From positions 18,600,001 to 18,664,000 of the forward strand of contig OZ281501.1 in assembly GCA_965637545.1 (NCBI GenBank): DNA of 64,000 nucleotides, given 5' to 3'. A program made the translations under genes and the position numbers. Of the stretch, positions 1 through 13,695 are shown piece after piece. Origin of the DNA: Phallusia mammillata (lineage: Eukaryota). The first letter of the stretch is position 1, and each line of letters opens with the position of its first letter. Below the pieces are notes generated by a model, which was not told the origin of the DNA, ran no database searches, and saw only the letters and a list, made by a program, of their open reading frames with translations.

Positions 1-11
1 ATTGTATATAT

Positions 12-227
12 CAGTGGTTCTCAAACTTTTTTATTGTCGGTGCCAAATGGTATTTTTTAAGTGTGTAGGGAGCCGCAAAAAAATGAAACCTTGCGAAAAT
101 CACTAAAGAAGATGACTTTGAAAGCTAAAATAGCAATGTTTGGTGGTTTTCTGAGGTCTGGTGCGAGCCGCAAAATAAGTAGTTGGGAGCCGGGTGCGGC
201 CCCGAAAACCGAGTTTGAGAACCACTG
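12..227. mobile_element. hAT (Charlie/Buster-type) MITE
   Basis: Terminal inverted repeats CAGTGGTTCTCAAACT (12) and AGTTTGAGAACCACTG (ending 227); flanks GTATATAT / GTGTATAT form a 7/8 matching 8-bp TSD with central TA. Confidence 0.85.
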
Positions 228-1172
228 GTGTATATTGTTGTGTATAGTGTAACTTGCTTACATACCTTCAAAATGCAAAATTTTGTTCAATTGTACATGC
301 TTTTTCATTACTTCAGAGGTGTATTATAAAAAACTCCAAGTCAAAGCAAATGGTTTGAAACTAATCCAGAATGCACTTCAATGCAATATTGTGTTTAGTT
401 TGATTTGTTTTTGTGAATTTCCTAAATCAAAAAAAAGAGAAAAAAAAAGAAAACGACCTGACAATGATTTTAAAAATAGTATCCGGTGGTTGTGAGGTAA
501 ATTTGTCAAACTCGATCCCAAAAAGTTTATTTGAATGCAACTTGCATTATCTTTGTAAAACCTGCGGTATTTGTGATAAGTATGGTTAGATCTGTTGTGT
601 GGTGAAGCAGCAAACACTTGTAAAAGTTGAAGAGCAATCAGTGAGCTAAGTTTCAGATGAAGAGCTCTCGCACCAGTCACAAAACAATGCCACTTGAAAT
701 TTATTGCGGGTCTGTATCAGTTTTTCAACCCTTGAAATATCAAGCGGACCGACACAGTGCAAACATTGTAGTACAGAAGTGTAGAGAAACTTTCAAACTA
801 CTTGCAGAAGCCTTTTTGGGAATGTTTTTGTGACAGAACTGTACATTTGAATAAATAAAACCATTATGAGTTAGAGGTAGGTTATAAATTAACTTTTTTA
901 TGCAGCATCTACTTGCTAACCAAGGTTTAAGGATATATATGTAGTTTGGATAAAAATGACAGTGGCAGAAAAAACTGACTAAAACTGTTTAATGAAAGAT
1001 TTTGATCTAAACAATATACTAAAGGTATATCAGCAGATATGACAAGTTAGGTAAAAGATTTCTGCTTCTGGTAAATTTAGTTTTATATTCTTACATAAAG
1101 AATAATTGCTTCTGTAGTTTAGGATATGGTAAAAATTCCTGAGTGTTTGTTATTGATTTGAGGGTTGCGTAA

Positions 1173-4100
1173 ATGGCACCTTGTATACAACTGCATAGAT
1201 TTTTAGCTTTGCAAGACAAGGAAAGGACAAATATTTTTACATTTCTTGTTGAAAATCCACAAGAAATATCCAGTTTTGATGTTCGTTCAAGAGAATTTCA
1301 GTTTGCTGGCCACCGCTGGTATGTTTATACTGGAAAACCAAACAACGAATACTTCAGGTAAGATCTCTATACGCATGTAATATCTTACTGGTTACTAAAC
1401 ATTGGTTACATAAGTTTTGCTGTATGTATCATTTAAAAACTATTTGACCATGAAATTAAACAAATTTAATGTAGTACTTAATAACTGAGTTTTTGAAAAC
1501 GGGTTGATTGCACAAATGGTATTTAAAACAATTTTATTGATGTTTTATGTTATACATAAAGACTGTTCTTTGGCATTACCTAAATTGACTAATTTTGTAT
1601 TATGGTAAGACTTTCTTTTGCCACATCCACTAGTCAAATAGATGTTTTAATGATTTTAAAACCTGTTATGTTTCTAGCTTCTATTTGAGAATTGTAAACC
1701 TTGGCAAAGAAGTTCGTGTGACAACTGTGTATTCGTTCAATGTCGTGAATCTTGTGAACTACCAGAACAACTACACATATCACAGTCCTCCTGCTGGCAG
1801 GGTTTTCTCTCGAGATGATGACGCGTTGTCGTGGGGATGGAAAGAGTTCATCCGTAGAGAGGTAACACCACTAGGAGGCGCTGTTTATAAATCACACAAT
1901 TTTGTGGCTAAAACTTGGCCGAATGACCCTGGGCGCCTTACCCATGTACAGACACAAAAAACCTGATCGGGATTCATCCTGAGTCGAAACCCGAAAAAGT
2001 TCCTAAATAGCATAATGACCAAGACAAGTAACAAGAAACATACATTTTTTGATAGTATGGTTTGAGTACATATATTTTGGTTAGTTGCATTACAAAGTCT
2101 TGTTAAAAAATTGCAGAAATTGTGTTTATTATGCAGTGTTACAATTATTCGAAACAAAATTCTGTAAAAGGCATAAAATGTTTACACCAGCAACCATAAA
2201 TAATAATGTTTAACTTTGCATTTTTTATTAAATGCCAGAAAATTTGCTTTCAGACTCTGTTAAAACCAAATGGTGGGTTTCTATTTGATGGGAACAAGGT
2301 TTTGGTTGAGTTGGAATGTAAGTCTTATAAAACTGTATTTGAGGAACCGATTCAACTGCCAAAGATTACACAAGAAAACCCGTTTCCTATGATCCACACT
2401 TCCCCATTCAGTGTTGGTGGATTTGCATGGCAGGTGATTTAAATTTGCTAAAAAATGATTTAAAACCAACTAACTCAAATTTAAAACCAGCGTTCTTGCA
2501 CAAATAGAAGTGGAAACAAATCCACATAGAATCAAAGTTTTTATGTGATCAAATGTTATCAGTAAATTTTCCAAAACTGCTTGAAGCAAGGTTACATAGT
2601 CTGAGGTTTAGTTTAAGTGTGTCCAAGTTTTTCTATAATACAATTTCGTTTGGTGTTTTAAATATGTCTTTGGCATGCTGCTACTAAAGGGTATATATAT
2701 TTTACTGGGTTTTAAGGACAATTTTGGACAACAGGAGTTAAAGGTTTATCAAAAACGACTCCAACTGTAAATCAGACTCTGCAACCCTGGGTTAAAGTTT
2801 GCTAACAAACAAACCAAATTGGACAAATGAGGATTTTCTGGCTTTTGACATGACAAAATAATTTTTGTTTTAGATAAGAATATTTCCTGATGGGCCAGAT
2901 GAAGACAATAAAGGGAATGTTGCTTTATTTCTGCATTGCACAACATCAAATCATTTGGCAAAAGTCAAAGCAAGATTTCTGATTGAAGGACAGGTGAGTG
3001 GGTTAATGTAAAAATTAAATCTAAGCAAAATAAAATCCCCATTGAAGTCCCCTAATGGAATAGACTGTGTTCATAAATTTATGTTTTGTATTACATTAAA
3101 AGCCCTAGAAACGATCGCTTGTGTTTCAGTCAGTTATAAGACCCAAGTATAACAGACAAGTTTGTTCCATGACATGCCAGTTTATTACAGTGTTTTCTGA
3201 ATCTTTAATTTGTCAAGAAAATATTGTATTTGCTGCATATTCCCGTTATTTGCATTAAAAGCATGACAAGTTGCATATGCAAATAACCAGATTTGTCTTT
3301 ACAAATTCTTGTCCATATTTTTCAGCAATCACCTGCTGTGTATGAACATACTTTTCCTCCCAACAGCATCAGTGAAATGCCAAGTGGCGTCGCTTTCCCC
3401 AATAAAGGAGATTTCATGAATTCACTGAAGGAAAATAAACTGAGAGTGGGAATTGAATTCATGACAGTCATGGAGGTATTTAATGCTTTCCACAAGGTGT
3501 ATGAGAACAAAAATATTGTTAAAAGTTACAAAAACAAACTATAGAACTAAATTGTCTTTAAATTAGCATGAAACTATTTTGTATATTTGAAACCTTTTTT
3601 TAATTACTTTTTTTAGTTTAGTTACTTTTAAGGTCTGTGTCATGTGTTTCTAAGCTATTAACTCTTGTTAGGTAAACGAGGTCCATGTTACACTCTCAGA
3701 GCCCAACATGTACCCAACTGTTTGTGTAACTCCATTCGAAGACATCAACGGCTGTCCGTGGGTGCTGAAAACCCTACAAGCCACAAAACTTAAGTTAAAA
3801 ATGGATCAAAACGAGAAAACTACAAGTGGATTGATGGAATTTTACCACAGACACATTATGTGGAATGCTACACTTGTATCACCAGGATCAGAAGATGTTT
3901 CATTAAACGTTCCTCTCAACACCAAAGGGCCGTTGATTGGTTATTTTGGTGAAAACTGGTCGGACGCTGATGTTATAAAGTCAGATTTGGCTGTTGAAGA
4001 CCTTGCTGTCACTGACAACCCATACAGGACCGATGTAGATGACGGATATGACAGGTTTGTACTGTACTTGTTGTTTAACATACACTGTGCTTTCATAGTC

Positions 4101-7100
4101 AAGTATTGTGGGTTTGACAGAGTATAAGTTTGATTTGCTTGTCAACTTTTCAAAAGTGACTTTTTCCATATTTGGAGACCATTCTAATTGTTTTTCATGC
4201 AAAATTGTATAGATTTTTTCAATTAAAAAAGCGACACCCTCTTCTGCATGTAATCTAGCTTGCTTGTCAGGCCTTGATTAAAATTGTGACAACATTGCAA
4301 ATAAGTGTGGTTGAGAGCCGGATTAAACCCTTTACCGTCTCTAAGCACGAAGCCTAAATCCCCTTAAGTGTCAAATTCAGTGTAGGCTTATGTCTGGAGA
4401 TAAAACAGCTGGTTGATAATTACTTTGCCTAATTGGTAATCCAGCCCTTGTGTATGAACTTGCAGTACTCCAAGCATACTGTGGTCAAGAAGCATATGAA
4501 TTTAAAAAAATACTGTGAAGCATTAAGAGTCTCTAGTATAAAATGTATGTTGAACTTTTGCATGTATCTAGGTGTTGCAAGTGTACAAAGAGTTGTTTTT
4601 TTTAACAGGTATTCTTATGTGTCTATACATGTTGAAATTGTGTCGAACCACTTACTTTATAAAACACCAGCTCCATCTCCAACTGGTGACAGAGAAAGAA
4701 AGCTTCTTTACAATGCAAGGTAGAGAACAAATTCTAAAACATAGGGTTAAGTGAGCTCATATAGGTGGTACAACAATCTTATGTTGCAAGAAAGTTTAAA
4801 CCTTGTCTTTTTATTAAGTTTGTCATTGTTAAACGATTTTATCAAACAGCAAGAATATTAAAAAAATGGGTTATGGAAAAAAAGGGAATTATCCATTTAT
4901 TTAAAAAAAATTGTAAACATTGAAAAAAATGTAAGGTGAAGTACTGTAAACTGGTTTAAATTACTTTTAGAGTACAAAAATTGTGTTGTACATAAAAAGC
5001 AATAGTTCTGCTCATAATAAATTTTATAATTGGTTCACCTAATGCAGTGGTTCCCAAACTTTATCTACTCGCGTACCATTTTTTTGGTTCATGCAGCGTT
5101 CTCGTACCACCTACAATCATGTTAGAATTTAATGAATAAAAATGTTACTAAACTTTACTAACTAACTTTACCTTAGTAACTTTGGCCTTCAGTAACCAAA
5201 GTCTCGTAAATATTAAACAAAACTTAGTCAAACTTTTACCGCCCTCGCTACAGTGCTACTGTCAACACAACTAGTAGCTTATTACAAAAACTGACTTTAA
5301 GGACTTATTACGTCGTAATAACAGATTCATTACGTCATAATAAATCTATTTCGTCACAAAGAAACCTTGCTTAACAGTTCAATGCGGCAATACACCAATG
5401 AATTAGAATTTAGTAGGAAATATAGTGTGAAATTTCACGCTCTACGTAATTTGTGTGAATTAAAACTTGTGTGAAATAAAGATCGCTTTGTGTGAACTTA
5501 ATAAGTTGCTTGCGTACCACCTTGGAGACCTTCGCGTACCACTAGTGGTACGCGTACCATAGTTTGGGAACCACTGACCTAATGTAAAGGTGGTTGTCGA
5601 ATTTATGTCATTTTTACAATTAACCCCAGTTTTCTGACCATCGGCAATTCATGTAATTTACTTCCAGGAAGGACAGAGCCCACGTGCACAGCAAATATCA
5701 GGATCTTTTAAGACAAAAAGCAACTCTTGAAAATAAATGTGAAAATTTGACACGAGAAAGAACCAGATTAATTGGAAACGACGGCGACACAGATGCAGAT
5801 TCTCTGATTCAAATTGTCCCAGATTATTCAAAGTTCCTGTTTGATGTACTGAGCGATCTTGCATTGTGTGGAACAACAAAAGGTAGTGATTTAATGTGGA
5901 GGACCACTTGAAACTTGTAGTGAACAAATAAAGTACTTGAAAACAGCTGTTAACTTGTTACCGATCAATAACAGATACACTTCTCAACACTTTTATCGCT
6001 TGGGCAAATGTGAGAATTATTCAATAATAATAACTAGGTTCCAAATTAACAATTTTAAATTAAATTAAGGACAATTATTGTAAAATGTGGGCGGTTGAAT
6101 ACTAAAAATTTGTTTCTACTTGTTTTTTTTTTACTCATAGAAATTATGTCTGCCTGTGTCTTGTGTACAAACTAAGCCAAATTGTTACAAGTTATTCCAC
6201 TTTTTTCTGTGTACCTTAGCTTTAAAAGCTTTAACGTTTCATGTCGCACCATACCAATCAAACTTTACAAACAAAATTATATTTAAAGTAGCATAAAAGC
6301 TAACTAAGCCAAATGGTAACAACTTATTGTAATTTATAGGTAAAAGTGTTGAGAGCAGATCAGGCAGAGCTTTCCTGGTTAAACCTCAACCACCAGAAGC
6401 TGAACGGATGAGCCGGTTTTCAGCTTATAGAGAAAATTTCAGCCTGTAAGTAGTGAACCCCTAACAAGTGTATGCATGTACAGACACATCCTGCAATTTG
6501 CCCACTTTGTATGCAATTAACCAGATTATTTGATTAACTCAGTAGTTCCATACTGGGGAAGGGTTTTTAAACTTGAGGGGAGGAATTTACTTTAAATATG
6601 TATATCTGGTATGTAAATAAACACTCAAACTCTGGAAATATAACCTGTGAAGTGAAGTTGATAAAATAACCAACTTTATGGTTTAGTATCCACTATGTAG
6701 TATATTAGGGAGGAATGAAAATGTTTTCAATTGTTGAAAAATGTTCCACTGGATTGACTAAATGACTCGTAACATTTCATTACAGTTGGCTTTAACAATC
6801 TTTATGCAATTAAATGGATTATGTGATTAACCAGATATGTCTGTGTAATGTAGATTAGATATTTTTAACAAGATCCTGTTTTTTTAGGTTGGTTTCTGAT
6901 GCCAGACCTGACCCAGCAGAACTAGCAGCAACATGCAAACAAGTGGAAAATTTCAAAACTATTCTGATGCAATTTATTCAAGCCAAGACTGCTTTGAGAC
7001 TAACAGACATAATAACATCAGGTAAACAAGCACAATATGTGTGTTCTCAAAGTTTTTGAATAAGTTTGATTTGGTGCATTATCTATGGACAAATGTATTT

Positions 7101-8783
7101 TATAAATTAAAAATGTAAAAATGTAAAGTGCTAAATTCGTATCGAAGACATAAAATCAGGAAACAGCTACAAAAACCTCATGGTTAAAAATACACTAAAC
7201 TAATCCTAAAATTATGGACCTTCTTCTGCTAATTCTTCTTGCTTGATATTATGTGAACATTATAATTTCATCACCAGGTTCTTTGGGGACGAACACAACA
7301 TGTAGCAATCGTTGGGACGTTGATTTGGTTCTTCTGAGTGCCGACATTCCACGTAATGGTCATGCAACGTGGATGCCTTCGTTTATTGTGGCGTTGGCCA
7401 GAATGTTAGAGGAAGGAAGTTTAGATGGAAAACTTCCAGGGACATCAAACTTTACCTACACGTAAGATGGAAAAAAATCGTTATGGTCAAGCTTGTAATT
7501 TAAAATGTAATTTATATCCTGCTGGTTATTTCAATTATTTTTTTTACAGGACATACAGTGTGCAATTTGACTTTAAAAGCAAGGTTGAAATAGATTTGTA
7601 TCCTGTGTATGACTGGCCCAATGAGGAAGGTTATGAAGCATTGTATGATGAGTTGCTACGGCAACGTACATCTGAGAATCTGTCGTGGTTTTGTCCTGCA
7701 GCTGCAGAAAGACAAAAAACATTCATTGAGGAACAGCCAGACCAGGTATATGACCTTTTTGGCATTTTGCATGAGTTATGACAAGGCATATTGTAGTGGT
7801 CATAATGCCAGTAAATACGGAAATATTTGTGTCTATGATAAGTTAAAAATCGACATGTATGCCTTTGCCAAGATTTTGTTTCAAAATAAAAATGTTGCTA
7901 AATATATACTGCTCTAAATAAGTGAACTAAATCTAGTATATTAGTTTTTAAGCATTTCCTCATTGTAATACTTTTGTCTTGTATCTTATGATATTTATTT
8001 CAGGTTAAAGACTTGATGAAGGTGATTAAATTTTGGAGGAATTCTGCCGATTGGAACGAGAAGCGTTGGAGGCCATCTTCATATTTGCTTTGTTTGCTTC
8101 TAATCCGTGCATATGAAAATGCTTGTCATGTTATCGAGGGCAGTTTGCCCAGCAATCGAACGGTTCTGAAATGCTTTGTAAAACTTGTTCTGTCCACTGG
8201 AAATGCCAGGTAACATGTTGAATCTGCATGTTTTTCTAGTTCTCATTTACAATGTTATTTACTCGACATGACCCTACAATGGCAGGCCTATTGTTTTGTC
8301 AAGGATTACTGAGATAGGAAGTAGAAATATCTCTGCATTGAATGTCCACATTTATTGCACTTTTTAATTCCCTTTATATAAACTTATTGCATTTTAACCC
8401 AATGCTTAAGTAGAAAAAAAATGTGCATTTGTCCAAAATTGTTGCCCACCTGCGTTTAGAACTTTAGATGGTCTTTGCAAATATCTCATGTTTTACTAGT
8501 TTTTAAACTATAAAAACTAATTGACATTGCTTGTTGCAGACCTGCACCAATGAGAATCTCATGGGCTCGCTTTTATGATCCAAAAGATTACAATATTGAG
8601 TACAGTAGTAGTTCGAACACTGAGTGCCCACCAATTGTGCAAGACCCAGCTAATCCCGCAAACAATGTAGCAGAGAGACCAGTGTCATGGCTACCATTCA
8701 GACAACTGCTTGAAACTTGGGCACATGCACTGGGCATGATGGAAGAAGGAACATTACTACCTATTGAATCCAGTCGACGTTAA
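1173..8783 (+). CDS. MATH(x3)-coiled coil-OAS-like nucleotidyltransferase fusion protein, ~865 aa, 14 exons
   Basis: Exons 1173-1357, 1678-1861, 2254-2433, 2874-2993, 3326-3475 (alternative in-frame donor at 3496), 3672-4054, 4609-4719, 5668-5882, 6340-6445, 6888-7021, 7278-7461, 7550-7745, 8004-8209, 8540-8783; all GT-AG and phase-consistent, 2598 nt in total. MATH signatures: FQFAGHRWYVY..YFSFYLRIV..FNVVN..SWGWKEFIRRE..GGFLFDGNKVLVELEC; SPFSVGGFAWQIRIFPDG..GNVALFL; a degenerate third copy (TPFEDINGCPWVL..YVSIHVEIV). OAS signatures: IITSGSLGTNT..DVDLVLL, VEIDLYPVYD, QKTFIEEQPDQVKDLMKVIKFW, PSSYLLCLL, IVQDPANPANNVA. Confidence 0.88.
5045..5576. mobile_element. hAT (Charlie/Buster-type) MITE in intron 7 of the MATH-OAS gene
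   Basis: TIRs CAGTGGTTCCCAAACT / AGTTTGGGAACCACTG; perfect 8-bp TSD ACCTAATG on both sides; subterminal CGCGTACCA repeats. Confidence 0.92.
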
Positions 8784-9157
8784 TTTGGGGAAAACTTTTT
8801 GATATAACATGTCTTCCACAAAGCATTTGCAATTTCTTTACCATTGAATTTTGTGACGTTAAATATTTTAGCTCGATGAATACTGCTTCCAACAACACTG
8901 TTTATATTGTTGTCACCAATTTAATAAATGCTTTTTTTCACTATTTGTGTGCAATTGTTTTCGTGTTTGTGAAATAAATGGGCATCAAAGTATTGAATGC
9001 ATTGAGTGCAGAAAACATTACTGTGTGTTTATTGGTGGTTTGATATTATTTTTGTTTTGTTTAGTTAAATGCAAATTAAAAATACTTGTTTATGTATTAT
9101 GTACACATTTACAGCTGATATCAATACATATCTAAGAAAAGTTGATTTGTGTTTTAG

Positions 9158-12064
9158 CTGACATGTGAAAACCATGATGACGGAGCAACCCCAGCAATTA
9201 TTCAGTGCAACGAATGTGGGAACTTGTGTTCAGAGTGTGATAGATACCTTCACTTGCATCGCAGAACACGATCGCATCAAAGACAGGTTTGGCTGATGTT
9301 ATTTGACTTTACTCACTAAAACTATGAGCAATGGCAACATGGTTATGACTTCACTCAAAAGAATTGTGTCATTTTTGTTTTCGTTGGTAATTTCCTGTCA
9401 CAAAGCTTGTTGTGTGCATGCAAGCCTGCCAAGCATATTCTGTATTTGTTGTAATCAAGAGAATTGACTTGGCAGATATTTAAAGAAGAAGAGGAGGCAA
9501 TTAGAGTGGATTTACATGAAGGCTGTGGAAGGATTAAGCTGTTTTGGTTTAAAGCTTTGGCAGATTCCAACACCTTAAAGGCAATGGTGGAATTTAAAGG
9601 CAGATCTACAGGTTTCTACAAATATAAACAACTAAACAAGTTTATCATGTGACATGCAGCTACCAGTTTCAATGCTTAATGTTGAAGGAATTAAAACATG
9701 ACATAATATCAAGAATGCTTGATAGCCTGATATTGTGGCTTGCATTTGAAGCAATTGCTCATAATTTAATTATAGAGGCAAATGGAATGTTTAGATGCTG
9801 TTTCTTAATCCACTAAGTTGTTGTGTTTCAGGTCAAATGCAACTGGTTGCAACCGATGCTTGTAGATTTTGTGGAAATGCATGTGACAACACTCAGTTGG
9901 TTTTAAGCAATGTCTGCAGTGATAAATCATGCCAGAAATATGCTACAGCTGTAAGTTTTGTAATGTTTGTACACTGAGCACACTAAAGTACGTAGAGAAC
10001 ACTAAATAATATGAAATGACCCTTGACAAACAACACATAAAATAAGGTTGAATGCCTTTCCTGGATTTTCACATTCCTCACTGGGGAAGAATACCTTACA
10101 GTCCTGGTACCAATACCAGCTAAAAAACAATGTTATAATTATTTTTTTGTTATGAAACAGGTTTGTGCAAAAACACACCCTTGTGGTCACCTCTGCGGTG
10201 GAGTCAAGGACGAAGAGACTTGTCTATTATGTCTTTACTCATCCTGTAATCCAGGATTGAATCAGGATGCTGACGATATGTGTATGGTTTGTTTTACCGA
10301 TGCATTGTCGGCTGCACCTGCAATTCAGGTAGGTCAAATTTAAAATTTTATTAATTATAAATATTCATTTCAGAGCAAAATTAGCCTATTGCAAAGGTTC
10401 TATCTCTTTCTCTAATTTACCCTTGGGCAGACTTTGAAGCAATTTTCTTTGAGTTCATTAACTTAACTAATCCAGCTTACTTTTTGGCTTATTGATATTT
10501 ACCACATCAAACTTTTCCTCAAGCATTATAATGTACCCTTTGTTAAGAATTACTGGGACCAACCCTAAAGTAGTGAAGTAGTCCAAAGTGTTATCACACC
10601 CATTTCATCAATCTCGGTGTTCTCCCACTTCAAATTCCACTGTAGACTTTTCAAACCCATTTACACACATAAAAGTTTGGATACCAACATAATTTGATAT
10701 CATGACCCTTACTGGCATGGCATAATCTATCAAACCTCTATTTTTGACACTTTTAAAATGTAAATGAACAAAAAAAATGATTTGAAATGCTTGCTTTTTT
10801 GCAGTTAAAATGTGGACACATATTCCATCATCACTGCTGCCAAACTCAGCTCCAGAAACAATGGGCTGGACCAAGAATCACGTTTGGCTTTCTACTTTGT
10901 TCTATTTGTAAGGTATGTGATTAAATTTCTAGAATGCTGTTCAACAAGTAAAAATTGTGCAGTATGCATGTAGACAATTTAAATTTATTCATGATAAAAA
11001 AATAGGTGAATGTCCTAATTAAATGTTTAAAAAGTTATGTTTGCGTACAAGTATTCGTTTGATATTCTTTGTGTAAAAATTCTAGAAAGAGTTTGACCAA
11101 ACCTTTTTTTAAGCAGGTGCAGTTGAAAAACAAATTAAGAACTTTGGAAAAGGATAAACAATATAATCTGATTGTTCTATTTGATTTTTTTTAGAATGAA
11201 ATTAGCCATCCTGCATTGGAGAGTGTTTTAAAACCATTACGAGAACTCATGCAAGAAGTTAAACGAAAAGCATTGCAAAGACTGGAGTATGAAGGTCTTA
11301 AAGAATGTGAATCAATTACCACTGTTGGAGGAAAATTCTACAAGGATCCAACAGGATTTGCTTTGAATAAATATGCTTACTACATGTGTTGCAACTGCAA
11401 TAAGGTATAAGGCTGATAAATGTGTATTTTAAAGGAAAGAAGTGATAATTATTCATGTTTATTAGGCCTATTATGGTGGAGAAGTAAGGTGTGATGCTGA
11501 AGCCGATGGAAATTTGTTTGATCCAAAAGAGCTAATTTGTGGTGCTTGCTCCGATGTATCCTGTGCGCAAATATGCCCTAAGCATGGGACAGACTTTTTG
11601 GAATATAAGGTAAAACAGTTATCCACTATTTTGGCTCAAGAGCATTTTTGGAAATTCGTATTTCAACTTCGTAAAAATATCTGTTTACCCATTTTGTTGG
11701 AGTCAAAAATTTTGAAACAAGTTTTTTAGGTTGCAAAGGTAAAGTATATGTTTTATATGGAACTTAAAAACAATTTTTTGAACCATATACAATGTTTTAA
11801 TCTATGTTGGTGTACTTTCAGTGCCGATATTGCTGCTCCGTAGCTGTATATTTTTGCTTTGGCACAACCCACTTCTGCCAACCTTGTCATGATGACTTCC
11901 AAAGGATAACTGGACTGCCCAAAAATGAACTACCACATTGTCCAGCTGGACACAAGGCAAGGCAGTTGGAAGGCAAAGAGTGTCCACTGCATGTTCAGCA
12001 TCCACCGACCGGGGAAGAATTTGCTTTAGGTTGTGGTGTTTGTCGAAATGCCCACACCTTTTGA
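9158..12064 (+). CDS. MYCBP2: MYCBP2/Highwire/RPM-1-like C-terminal module (B-box-like, RING-H2, tandem-cysteine RCR E3 domain), ~418 aa, 5' end not found
   Basis: Exons 9158-9286, 9476-9611, 9832-9950, 10161-10328, 10805-10912, 11195-11404, 11466-11609, 11822-12064; phases consistent. Translation [118 protein letters not shown] matches the human MYCBP2 C-terminus as I recall it. It begins at a splice acceptor with no in-frame ATG. Confidence 0.93.
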
Positions 12065-12336
12065 AATCAATGCTTAGCTCAGTTTGCTATTGAAGCAAAT
12101 ATTAAGAAACCTTTCTTCTGTTGTAAAGTTCATTTTTGTTGTCTAATGTTGTCTCAATGGTGTTAAACTGCTATGGCAACAATAAAATATAATTGAGGCC
12201 TGCATACACAAAGAATTGTCCCCAAATTTCTAGTTGTAAAGGACAAGAAATTCATGTACTGTACACATAAACAACCTGAAGTACACATAATATATAGATT
12301 TCATTGCAAAAAAAGATAAACAAAACGTAAAAAAAA

Positions 12337-13695
12337 TTACTGCTCATGTAAAATACCATTTTCCATTAAAATTTTCCAATCCTGATCTTTAACTATAACA
12401 CCATCACTTGCTAAATCTTGCTCGTCACTTTCAAACGTCATCATGTCATGTAAAGCAGAGGAAAAGTCCAAAGGAGTGTCTGCGCATTTCATCAAAGAAA
12501 AACAAGCTTTGCGAAACACATTGTTGCAACTATACTTGACGATATCGGTTATAGCTTCTACTGTGCACTTTGTTGCGGTTGCACGACTTTCATTCTTATC
12601 TGACTGATTCTTGGCCAGAAGACACTTCTCCAAACAATTCATACAAACCTCATTTATATTTGTTTTGTTAAGTTCAACAATTTCTTCATAATTCTGCTGG
12701 ACATATTTCAGGCATTCCCACTTTGCAGGTACTTCTGACATTTCAATGTTTGCGTTGACTTCCAAATTTATAATTACTATGATGCTTAATGGGGCAAAAC
12801 TTTTTTTCCAAATTATTTCCCAATTACCATTCGGTAGTAAGTCATCACACAGTTTGCTATTCACTGCTTCAAGTACAGTAAAGGGCAAGTTTTTTGATGA
12901 TATAAAGTCCAAATATGATGCAATTTTACATGGCTCTAGTGACACATAGGGCATTCCGAAGGGGCCATATAAAAACACTGACAAAGCGGGGGCAGATGTT
13001 TTCATTAATGTAATTGCTGTGGATACATTGTAGGAATAAGTGTTGTATGTGCAAATGACTGGTTCACTTACTATAAATTCTAATGTTTGTTTTGGGCAAT
13101 GGCCAACATAAAATTCCGGTGTTAAAACTAGCCCTGTGGAGCACATATTGCAATTCATTTCCCATGTCATATCGTTTTTACCATCTTCTGTCAAAAAGCA
13201 GAAAGACACCGACGTAAATTCGTTAAACATGTTGTAAATGTGTTTAAGAAAGGCCATTAGACGAAGTCCAACTAGTTGTGCAAAGTTTGTGGAGCATACC
13301 ATTTTTAGAGCAAACGCAGATGTAAACTTCTCCGTCGGTGAACATTTCGTGTTGGTTTGAACAATGTCAAATTGGCTTTCTTCTTCACAAACTATGGTTT
13401 CGACTGTACTGTCAAGCTCGCTAGAAGTTTGCTGTGTTTGAAAACAAATGTTGGTCGCATTTTCTAACTCTATACAGCCGGACGCAAGTAGATCGTGTAG
13501 CTGAAATATCACCAGCCCTTTCGCTGCAACTTTGAACTTGTATTCACATACGTTTGTTTGCAAAGTTCGACCCGGACAAACAGTAATGTCAATCCAGCAA
13601 GGCGAACTGTCCGTTTTAGAAAGAAACGACAACTGTAAAACATTTGTTACCGTGTTGTAAAGTGAGCATAACTTTTTTTCCAACACAGCATCCAT
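12337..13695 (-). CDS. TOP6BL: Type II topoisomerase VI subunit B-like protein (TOPOVIBL), single exon, 452 aa
   Basis: Uninterrupted 452-aa ORF. LSVFLYGPFGMP resembles vertebrate TOP6BL VSIFLYGPLGLP, and AITDIVKYSCNNVFRKACFSLMKCADT resembles the transducer-helix segment [27 protein letters not shown]. Recognised from recalled motifs, not from a search. Confidence 0.72.
   Translation of the reverse strand: MDAVLEKKLCSLYNTVTNVLQLSFLSKTDSSPCWIDITVCPGRTLQTNVCEYKFKVAAKGLVIFQLHDLLASGCIELENATNICFQTQQTSSELDSTVETIVCEEESQFDIVQTNTKCSPTEKFTSAFALKMVCSTNFAQLVGLRLMAFLKHIYNMFNEFTSVSFCFLTEDGKNDMTWEMNCNMCSTGLVLTPEFYVGHCPKQTLEFIVSEPVICTYNTYSYNVSTAITLMKTSAPALSVFLYGPFGMPYVSLEPCKIASYLDFISSKNLPFTVLEAVNSKLCDDLLPNGNWEIIWKKSFAPLSIIVIINLEVNANIEMSEVPAKWECLKYVQQNYEEIVELNKTNINEVCMNCLEKCLLAKNQSDKNESRATATKCTVEAITDIVKYSCNNVFRKACFSLMKCADTPLDFSSALHDMMTFESDEQDLASDGVIVKDQDWKILMENGILHEQ

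What the first reader, a model, noticed from the sequence alone, without database searches (positions are those of the whole stretch)
9158..12064. Orphan MYCBP2 RING-Cys-relay E3 module with no N-terminal ~4000 aa nearby
Seen in sequence: only the last ~418 aa of MYCBP2 are present, starting at a phase-0 acceptor (9157), and the preceding 9 kb on the same strand are occupied by the MATH-OAS gene. Both relay cysteines (EVRCDA and VYFCFG, matching human C4520 and C4572) and the PKELIC Glu, CHDD His and RING-H2 ligands are intact. Established knowledge: MYCBP2/Highwire is normally a ~4600-aa protein and the RCR ligase that esterifies threonine. Inference: either (a) a stand-alone minimal RCR ligase from a 3' partial duplication, perhaps using a mini-exon ATG-GGC-ATC-AAA at 8978-8989 with donor GTATTG or SL trans-splicing, or (b) the true MYCBP2 3' end with MATH-OAS nested on the same strand in a >9-kb intron. 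Both would be unusual.
Basis: partly seen in the sequence, partly recalled or inferred. Interest (0 to 1): 0.75.

Follow-up and report, generated by a model that had tools for sequence, protein, structure and literature searches.

The report
MYCBP2 gene tail, not an orphan
The eight exons are the ordinary, expressed 3' end of the sea squirt's MYCBP2/Highwire ubiquitin-ligase gene, spliced to MYCBP2 exons that lie left of the window. The only unusual feature is that the MATH-OAS gene apparently sits on the same strand inside the long intron in front of them.

Summary
Window 9158-12064 (+) carries eight GT..AG exons encoding 418 aa: a B-box plus a complete RING-Cys-relay (RCR) module. It is 72% identical to the solved human MYCBP2 fragment. 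33 of 34 Cys/His are kept, as are both relay cysteines and the Glu, His and Phe residues tied to threonine esterification. No other MYCBP2 exon lies in the 64-kb window.

The "orphan" reading is refuted. Spliced transcript contigs from four independent studies confirm all seven introns. At 9158 they all continue upstream for 112 to 1710 nt. That sequence is not a 16-nt spliced leader, not the proposed mini-exon, and not found anywhere in the window. Its last 32 nt read, in the only open frame, SAKSAHNKNK|LTCENHDDG. Ciona savignyi MYCBP2 has SSARSNQTKNR|LTCTNHDDG at the same place.

So 9158 is an internal, cis-spliced exon of a longer MYCBP2 mRNA. By inference the preceding intron exceeds 9157 nt, against 61-476 nt for the other seven. 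It contains the multi-exon MATH-OAS gene on the same strand. This scan has already noted two other same-strand nested genes in this genome.

This is an ordinary ortholog in a moderately uncommon nested layout. The upstream exons themselves could not be seen with these tools.

The parts
1..9157 (+). Window-visible part of the long MYCBP2 intron in front of E1. The intron exceeds 9157 nt and its donor lies left of the window.
   Evidence: Contigs joined at 9158 continue into letters absent from the window. There are no MYCBP2-like exons in 1-9157. The intron assignment is an inference.
1173..8930 (+). MATH-OAS gene, which is multi-exon and on the same strand, lying inside that intron. Its stop is at 8783 and AATAAA signals start at 8923 and 8973.
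Evidence: A separate spliced contig covers 6888..8930 with four GT..AG introns and has no joint to the RCR exons.
9158..9286 (+). E1, with a phase-0 acceptor. It encodes the B-box-like zinc finger (LTCENHDDG...).
   Evidence: Weak Pfam ANCHR-like B-box match. 84% identical to C. savignyi MYCBP2. Cis-spliced to an upstream exon in four runs.
9476..9611 (+). E2. It contains the first in-frame Met, residue 80.
   Evidence: Joint 9286/9476 seen in 4 runs. tblastn result. Met position.
9832..9950 (+). E3, a cysteine-rich linker.
   Evidence: Joints seen in 4 runs. tblastn result.
10161..10328 (+). E4. The RING begins here ([11 protein letters not shown]).
   Evidence: PDB 5O6C, E 1e-7, chain residues 4-28.
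10805..10912 (+). E5, the second half of the RING ([10 protein letters not shown] ... CSICK).
   Evidence: PDB hit at 4e-12. RING Pfam hits below cut-off because the piece is short.
11195..11404 (+). E6, the linker helix and the start of the tandem-cysteine domain.
   Evidence: PDB hit at 8e-23, chain residues 65-134.
11466..11609 (+). E7, carrying the upstream relay Cys (EVRCDA, equivalent to C4520) and the PKELIC Glu (equivalent to E4534).
   Evidence: PDB hit at 4e-21. Residue mapping.
11822..12064 (+). E8, carrying the downstream catalytic Cys (YFCFG, equivalent to C4572), the CHDD His (equivalent to H4583), the C-terminal zinc sites and the TGA stop.
   Evidence: PDB hit at 1e-45, 88% identity. 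Residue mapping.
12065..12225 (+). 3' UTR, with AATAAA at 12181-12186. Contigs end at 12198-12225.

Best explanation
Exons 9158-12064 are the last eight exons of the sea squirt's MYCBP2/Highwire/RPM-1 ortholog. They are cis-spliced at 9158 to upstream MYCBP2 exons that lie beyond the left edge of the window. The encoded C-terminus is a catalytically competent RCR module. By homology, the RING binds E2~Ub, ubiquitin passes to the first Cys (window residue 299, equivalent to C4520), is relayed to the second Cys (residue 350, equivalent to C4572), and is discharged onto Thr/Ser hydroxyls with help from the conserved Glu, His and Phe residues. The intron in front of E1 exceeds 9157 nt because it contains the whole multi-exon MATH-OAS gene on the same strand, and that gene makes its own separate mRNA. 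Shown here: the exon structure, expression, cis-splicing into upstream MYCBP2-like coding sequence, residue conservation, and separate mRNAs for the two genes. Inferred: the position of the upstream exons on the same scaffold, a full-length (about 4000 aa) product, and enzymatic activity.
For: All seven introns are spliced exactly as predicted in contigs of four runs from four studies. Every contig runs on upstream of 9158, by 112, 226, about 454 and 1710 nt, with one identical 30-nt consensus. That 30-mer is absent from the window on both strands at up to 3 mismatches. Together with AG it reads in the only open frame SAKSAHNKNK|LTCENHDDG, against C. savignyi MYCBP2 SSARSNQTKNR|LTCTNHDDG. The 418 aa are 80% identical to C. 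savignyi MYCBP2 and 60-69% identical to full-length animal MYCBP2 proteins, always at their extreme C-terminus. The runs holding 0.26-0.39 of the sampled words hold exons only, so they are RNA; the DNA runs hold 1.00. The three differences in the X17 contig are all synonymous. The other seven introns measure 61-476 nt, against more than 9157 nt for this one. E1 offers no usable start: the first in-frame Met is residue 80 and it follows four out-of-frame ATGs. Same-strand nested genes were noted elsewhere in this genome.
Against: The upstream exons were never seen in genomic DNA. Only 30 nt of the upstream mRNA could be read, and the rest is known only as contig length. The run type 'RNA' is the tool's guess. 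Contigs drop rare isoforms, so a minor short isoform cannot be excluded. No protein of this species appeared in the protein databases in the length ranges where tunicate hits could have been listed, so a full-length product is not documented here.
Confidence: 0.86

Rival explanations
1. The region is a stand-alone minimal RCR ligase gene. In this reading the 418-aa module is its own gene, started by the ATG mini-exon at 8978-8989 or by SL trans-splicing at 9158, possibly as the downstream cistron of an operon with MATH-OAS.
For: The MATH-OAS 3' end lies close by on the same strand: AATAAA starts at 8923 and 8973, and the acceptor is at 9158. Tunicates use SL-resolved operons (PMC1488885). Short RCR proteins with both relay cysteines do exist in other organisms.
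Against: Four of four contigs pass 9158 into 112-1710 nt of other sequence encoding MYCBP2-like residues. No joint 8989/9158 was found, and depth over 8964-9157 is essentially zero. There is no in-frame ATG before residue 80, and four out-of-frame ATGs come first. Ciona operons typically have no intercistronic DNA, whereas here the gap is about 180-230 nt.
Confidence: 0.03
2. The region is a partial duplicate that is larger than the window shows. In this reading a truncated second MYCBP2 copy, with at least about 570 aa upstream plus the RCR, is expressed here while the full-length gene lies elsewhere.
For: Only 1710 nt of upstream mRNA is documented. The rest of the gene is unseen.
Against: There is no sign of a second copy. 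Every contig carries one and the same upstream sequence. Conservation is very high and the polymorphisms are synonymous only, as expected for the single essential ortholog. This reading is also less parsimonious.
Confidence: 0.06
3. The layout is an assembly artefact or the product of genic trans-splicing. In this reading MATH-OAS was misplaced between MYCBP2 exons by a misjoin, or the RCR exons are transcribed separately and joined in trans to the MYCBP2 body.
For: The donor exon is not visible. Chimeric trans-spliced RNAs are reported in Ciona (PMC11155486; abstract only).
Against: Two DNA runs hold 100% of the sampled words of 8000-12400, which includes the MATH-OAS/E1 interval, although they may be the source of the assembly itself. 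The window has no N and no composition break. Cis-splicing is the default for an acceptor that has an upstream donor (PMC1488885).
Confidence: 0.04

Closest known systems
Human MYCBP2 (PAM/Phr1) RCR module, PDB 5O6C and 6T7F
   Same: The order is the same: RING, linker helix, tandem-cysteine domain. Identity over 262 aligned residues is 71.8%, and 33/34 Cys/His are kept. Both relay cysteines and the Glu, His and Phe residues associated with threonine esterification are kept, and the C-terminus ...[11 protein letters not shown] is identical. The mechanism is as described in PMC9120709.
   Different: There are only ordinary ortholog-level substitutions. One non-conserved His (H4477) is Lys here.
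Ciona savignyi MYCBP2 fragment H2YTX0 (P0001, 1119 aa)
   Same: It is 80% identical over all 418 aa. The residues just upstream of the B-box match the letters the transcripts carry upstream of 9158.
   Different: It comes from a different species and is itself a partial model. Its gene structure could not be fetched.
Same-strand nested (host/included) gene pairs, e.g. in Drosophila (PMC3814207) and two cases noted in this genome (eIF2-alpha in RPL30, ADAT2 in GLO1)
   Same: A complete gene lies inside one intron of a host gene on the same strand, and each gene yields its own mRNA.
   Different: The included gene here is large (about 7.8 kb) and multi-exon. In Drosophila, 72.5% of same-strand nested genes are single-exon. 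The host's donor exon was not seen.
Ciona SL-resolved operons (PMC1488885)
   Same: Two same-strand genes lie close together in a trans-splicing organism.
   Different: The downstream acceptor is cis-spliced to MYCBP2 exons and not to the 16-nt leader. A gap of about 180-230 nt is present, whereas Ciona operons usually have none.

Membership tests
RCR-type E3 ligase (MYCBP2/PHR family C-terminus) | RING zinc ligands and tandem-cysteine-domain zinc ligands are present | tested here: met
   33 of 34 Cys/His of the solved human chain are kept. The one change (H4477K) lies in the linker.
RCR-type E3 ligase (MYCBP2/PHR family C-terminus) | Two relay cysteines (human C4520 and C4572) | tested here: met
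   Cys at window residues 299 (EVRCDA) and 350 (YFCFG) align to them.
RCR-type E3 ligase (MYCBP2/PHR family C-terminus) | Esterification-site residues (E4534, H4583, F4573, F4578, F4586) | tested here: met
   All five are identical. The list of residues comes from my own knowledge of Pao et al. 2018.
RCR-type E3 ligase (MYCBP2/PHR family C-terminus) | Thioester relay and threonine esterification activity | not testable with these tools
   This needs a biochemical assay.
Full-length PHR protein (RLD, two PHR domains, RBD, FBD1, MBD, then RING-TC) | The large N-terminal body lies on the same mRNA | tested here: inconclusive
   Transcripts extend at least 1710 nt upstream, and the 10 readable residues match C. 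savignyi MYCBP2. The domains themselves are outside the window and unseen.
Same-strand nested gene in a host intron | The included gene and the host exons are on the same strand | tested here: met
   The introns of both genes read GT..AG on +.
Same-strand nested gene in a host intron | The included gene lies wholly between a host donor and a host acceptor | tested here: inconclusive
   The acceptor at 9158 is shown to be in use. The donor exon is absent from the window, so it must lie left of position 1, but it was not seen.
Same-strand nested gene in a host intron | The two mature mRNAs are separate, with no cross-splicing | tested here: met
   The contigs are separate and there is no MATH-OAS-to-E1 joint in four runs. 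Rare forms cannot be excluded.
SL-resolved operon (Ciona type) | The first acceptor of the downstream cistron is joined to the spliced leader | tested here: not met
   The upstream letters run for 112-1710 nt, encode MYCBP2-like residues, and end in ...AAAAATAAG. This is far longer than a 16-nt leader.
SL-resolved operon (Ciona type) | There is no intercistronic DNA | tested here: not met
   AATAAA starts at 8923 and 8973 and the acceptor is at 9158. The criterion comes from PMC1488885.

The most novel reading that the evidence does not exclude
Because a polyadenylated, multi-exon immune-type gene (MATH-OAS) sits on the same strand in the last long intron before the catalytic exons, the two outputs could compete. 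Use of the MATH-OAS poly(A) sites on MYCBP2 pre-mRNA would yield an RCR-less MYCBP2. Alternatively, read-through or SL trans-splicing at 9158 could yield a minor RCR-only isoform starting at Met80. Either would couple antiviral-gene expression to the activity of an axon-integrity ligase.
Probability: 0.06. Interest if true: 0.55.

Novelty: already known. Interest (0 to 1): 0.15.

Why it matters
This result removes a false lead. There is no minimal stand-alone RCR ligase here. It also weakens the companion idea that MATH-OAS and the E3 module form a two-gene operon or immune unit. What remains is a well-conserved tunicate MYCBP2 ortholog, useful mainly for correct gene annotation. The RCR exons must be joined to upstream exons across an intron of more than 9 kb, and a gene finder may split the model there. 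It is also a further example of same-strand gene nesting in a trans-splicing chordate, which may interest people studying how cis-splicing, intronic polyadenylation and SL trans-splicing are kept apart.

Tried and rejected
(1) Getting this species' own MYCBP2 protein from the word-indexed protein search failed. The search with a python full-length query was swamped by vertebrates. The searches with the C. savignyi C-terminus, covering candidates of 615-1958 aa and 230-733 aa, returned no protein of this species.

(2) Reaching the left flank through the look-up of encoding contigs failed. Window ORFs 657-830, 1173-1358, 11804-12061 and 12340-13695 and protein P0001 are all not on record.

(3) Earlier scan notes contain nothing on MYCBP2 exons in this genome, by words or by sequence. 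Coordinates left of the window cannot be queried.

(4) The upstream 32-mer was not found in JGI metagenome contigs.

(5) The mini-exon at 8978-8989 is rejected because no joint uses it and no depth covers it.

(6) The operon reading is rejected.

(7) The spliced 418-aa protein was not typed into any search tool, so whole-protein Pfam and PDB scans were replaced by exon-wise scans. Short pieces give sub-threshold Pfam RING hits.

Full report
**What is in the sequence**

Window 9158-12064 (+) holds eight open segments with AG acceptors and GT donors: E1 9158-9286, E2 9476-9611, E3 9832-9950, E4 10161-10328, E5 10805-10912, E6 11195-11404, E7 11466-11609 and E8 11822-12064. Together they give 418 aa ending in TGA, with no internal stop. 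The window has no N and an even composition of about 35% GC.

Each exon was searched on its own against solved structures. All five exons searched (E4-E8) hit only human MYCBP2 (5O6C, 6T7F) strongly: E8 at 1e-45 with 88% identity, E6 at 8e-23, E7 at 4e-21, E5 at 4e-12 and E4 at 1e-7. Pfam on the short pieces gives only sub-threshold B-box and RING matches, as expected for fragments.

Aligned to the 263-aa human chain (P0425), the module is 71.8% identical and keeps 33 of 34 Cys/His. It keeps both relay cysteines (equivalent to C4520 and C4572). It also keeps E4534, H4583, F4573, F4578 and F4586. The human numbering assumes the chain ends at residue 4640, and the role of these residues comes from my own knowledge of Pao et al. 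2018. The relay mechanism is summarised in PMC9120709.

tblastn of full-length MYCBP2 proteins (4673, 4454, 3169 and 3114 aa) and of the C. savignyi fragment finds nothing else in the 64 kb window on either strand.

**Organism and neighbours**

Earlier notes of this scan identify the genome as a sea squirt. They place a MATH-coiled-coil-OAS gene at 1173-8783. The best protein relative of the 418 aa is Ciona savignyi H2YTX0, at 80% identity.

**The decisive test: transcripts**

Fourteen runs guessed to be RNA hold 0.26-0.39 of the sampled words of 8000-12400, which corresponds to exons only. Two DNA runs hold 1.00. I laid contigs of four runs from four different studies on 6600-12500.

- All seven introns are removed exactly at the predicted GT..AG sites in all four runs.
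- The transcripts end at 12198-12225, just after AATAAA at 12181.
- At 9158, every contig continues upstream into sequence that does not lie on the laid stretch. The extensions are 112 nt (X5), 226 nt (X6), about 454 nt (X1) and 1710 nt (X17).
- All four contigs share one identical 30-nt consensus next to the joint.
- The MATH-OAS transcript is a separate contig (6888..8930, four GT..AG introns on the + strand). No joint links it, or the proposed mini-exon at 8978-8989, to E1. Depth over 8964-9157 is essentially nil.

The 30-mer occurs nowhere in the 64-kb window on either strand, even with three mismatches. With the two further letters AG it is open in one frame only, the frame of E1. It reads SAKSAHNKNK|LTCENHDDG, and C. 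savignyi MYCBP2 has SSARSNQTKNR|LTCTNHDDG at that point.

The exon at 9158 is therefore an internal exon, cis-spliced to a canonical MYCBP2 exon that lies outside the window. A 16-nt spliced leader or a 12-nt mini-exon cannot account for 112-1710 nt of upstream sequence.

Independent of the RNA data, E1 is a poor first exon. It has ATGs at 9163, 9174, 9177 and 9214, all out of frame, and the first in-frame Met is residue 80.

The three differences in the X17 contig (at 9511, 9577 and 9920) are all synonymous. This is a small sign of purifying selection and of an independent individual.

**What follows by inference**

Cis-splicing needs the donor upstream on the same strand. Since it is not in 1-9157, the intron in front of E1 exceeds 9157 nt. 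The seven introns inside the module measure 61-476 nt.

The whole visible MATH-OAS gene lies on the same strand between the unseen donor and the 9158 acceptor: ATG at 1173, stop at 8783, AATAAA at 8923 and 8973.

I could not see the left flank:
- Coordinates left of the window cannot be queried in the notes.
- No note mentions MYCBP2 elsewhere in the genome.
- The exact-product look-up has nothing on record for window ORFs.
- This species' proteins did not surface in the protein searches.

The location of the upstream exons and the full length of the product therefore remain inferences.

**Comparison with known things**

As an enzyme module, this is an ordinary MYCBP2/Highwire/RPM-1 C-terminus, and all sequence-level defining features of the RCR were tested and met.

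As a gene arrangement, it is a same-strand nested pair. Nested genes are common. In Drosophila, about 29% are on the host's strand, and 72.5% of those same-strand nested genes are single-exon, a pattern attributed to selection against mis-splicing (PMC3814207). A large multi-exon included gene is therefore the less common case.

This scan has already noted two same-strand nested genes in this same genome (s1-351709 and s1-351713). Tunicates, with SL trans-splicing, may tolerate such layouts.

The arrangement is not a Ciona-type operon. Those lack intercistronic DNA and have an SL on the downstream cistron (PMC1488885). Neither holds here. This contradicts the companion note s1-369050.

**Rivals**

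- A minor SL-9158 or Met80 isoform cannot be excluded from contigs, but it has no support.
- A partial duplicate longer than 1710 nt of mRNA, or a misassembly, is possible only because the flank is unseen. One shared upstream sequence in all runs, very high conservation, and full coverage of the MATH-OAS/E1 interval in DNA runs argue against both.

**Verdict**

The "orphan" reading is refuted, and the nested-gene alternative is supported by inference. Interest is low: this is an ordinary conserved ortholog, with a modestly uncommon host/nested gene layout that matters mainly for annotation.

Noticed in passing
window 12337-13695 (-): There is an intronless 452-aa ATG ORF on the opposite strand. 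It ends about 110 nt beyond the MYCBP2 poly(A) region, so the two are convergent neighbours. Its only family match is a weak one to Pfam DUF4554 (E 6e-5, below cut-off). The exact product is not on record in the gene-position index.
   Followed up: partly
proteins P0150, P0348, P0349, P0073 (about 890-906 aa) and P0456, P0469 (about 493 aa): RCR modules occur outside the giant PHR context. There are Hsp70-domain + RCR fusions (one is annotated 'Hsp70 chaperone', Blomia tropicalis) and macro-domain (PF01661) + RING + RCR proteins. Short protist proteins also carry the module (Thecamonas 876 aa, Balamuthia 629 aa, Tetrahymena 693 aa). In the eight of these that I aligned (all but P0349), both relay cysteines and the CH motif align with human C4520, C4572 and H4583. 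A stand-alone or re-fused RCR is therefore a real category, just not here.
   Followed up: partly
window 8783-9157: The MATH-OAS 3' region has two AATAAA signals (starting at 8923 and 8973). Contigs end at 8912-8930. No transcript contig covers 8931-9155.
   Followed up: yes
window 9511, 9577, 9920: One run (X17) differs from the window at three third-codon positions (GAT>GAC, TTA>TTG, AGT>AGC). All three are synonymous, so this is ordinary allelic variation.
   Followed up: yes
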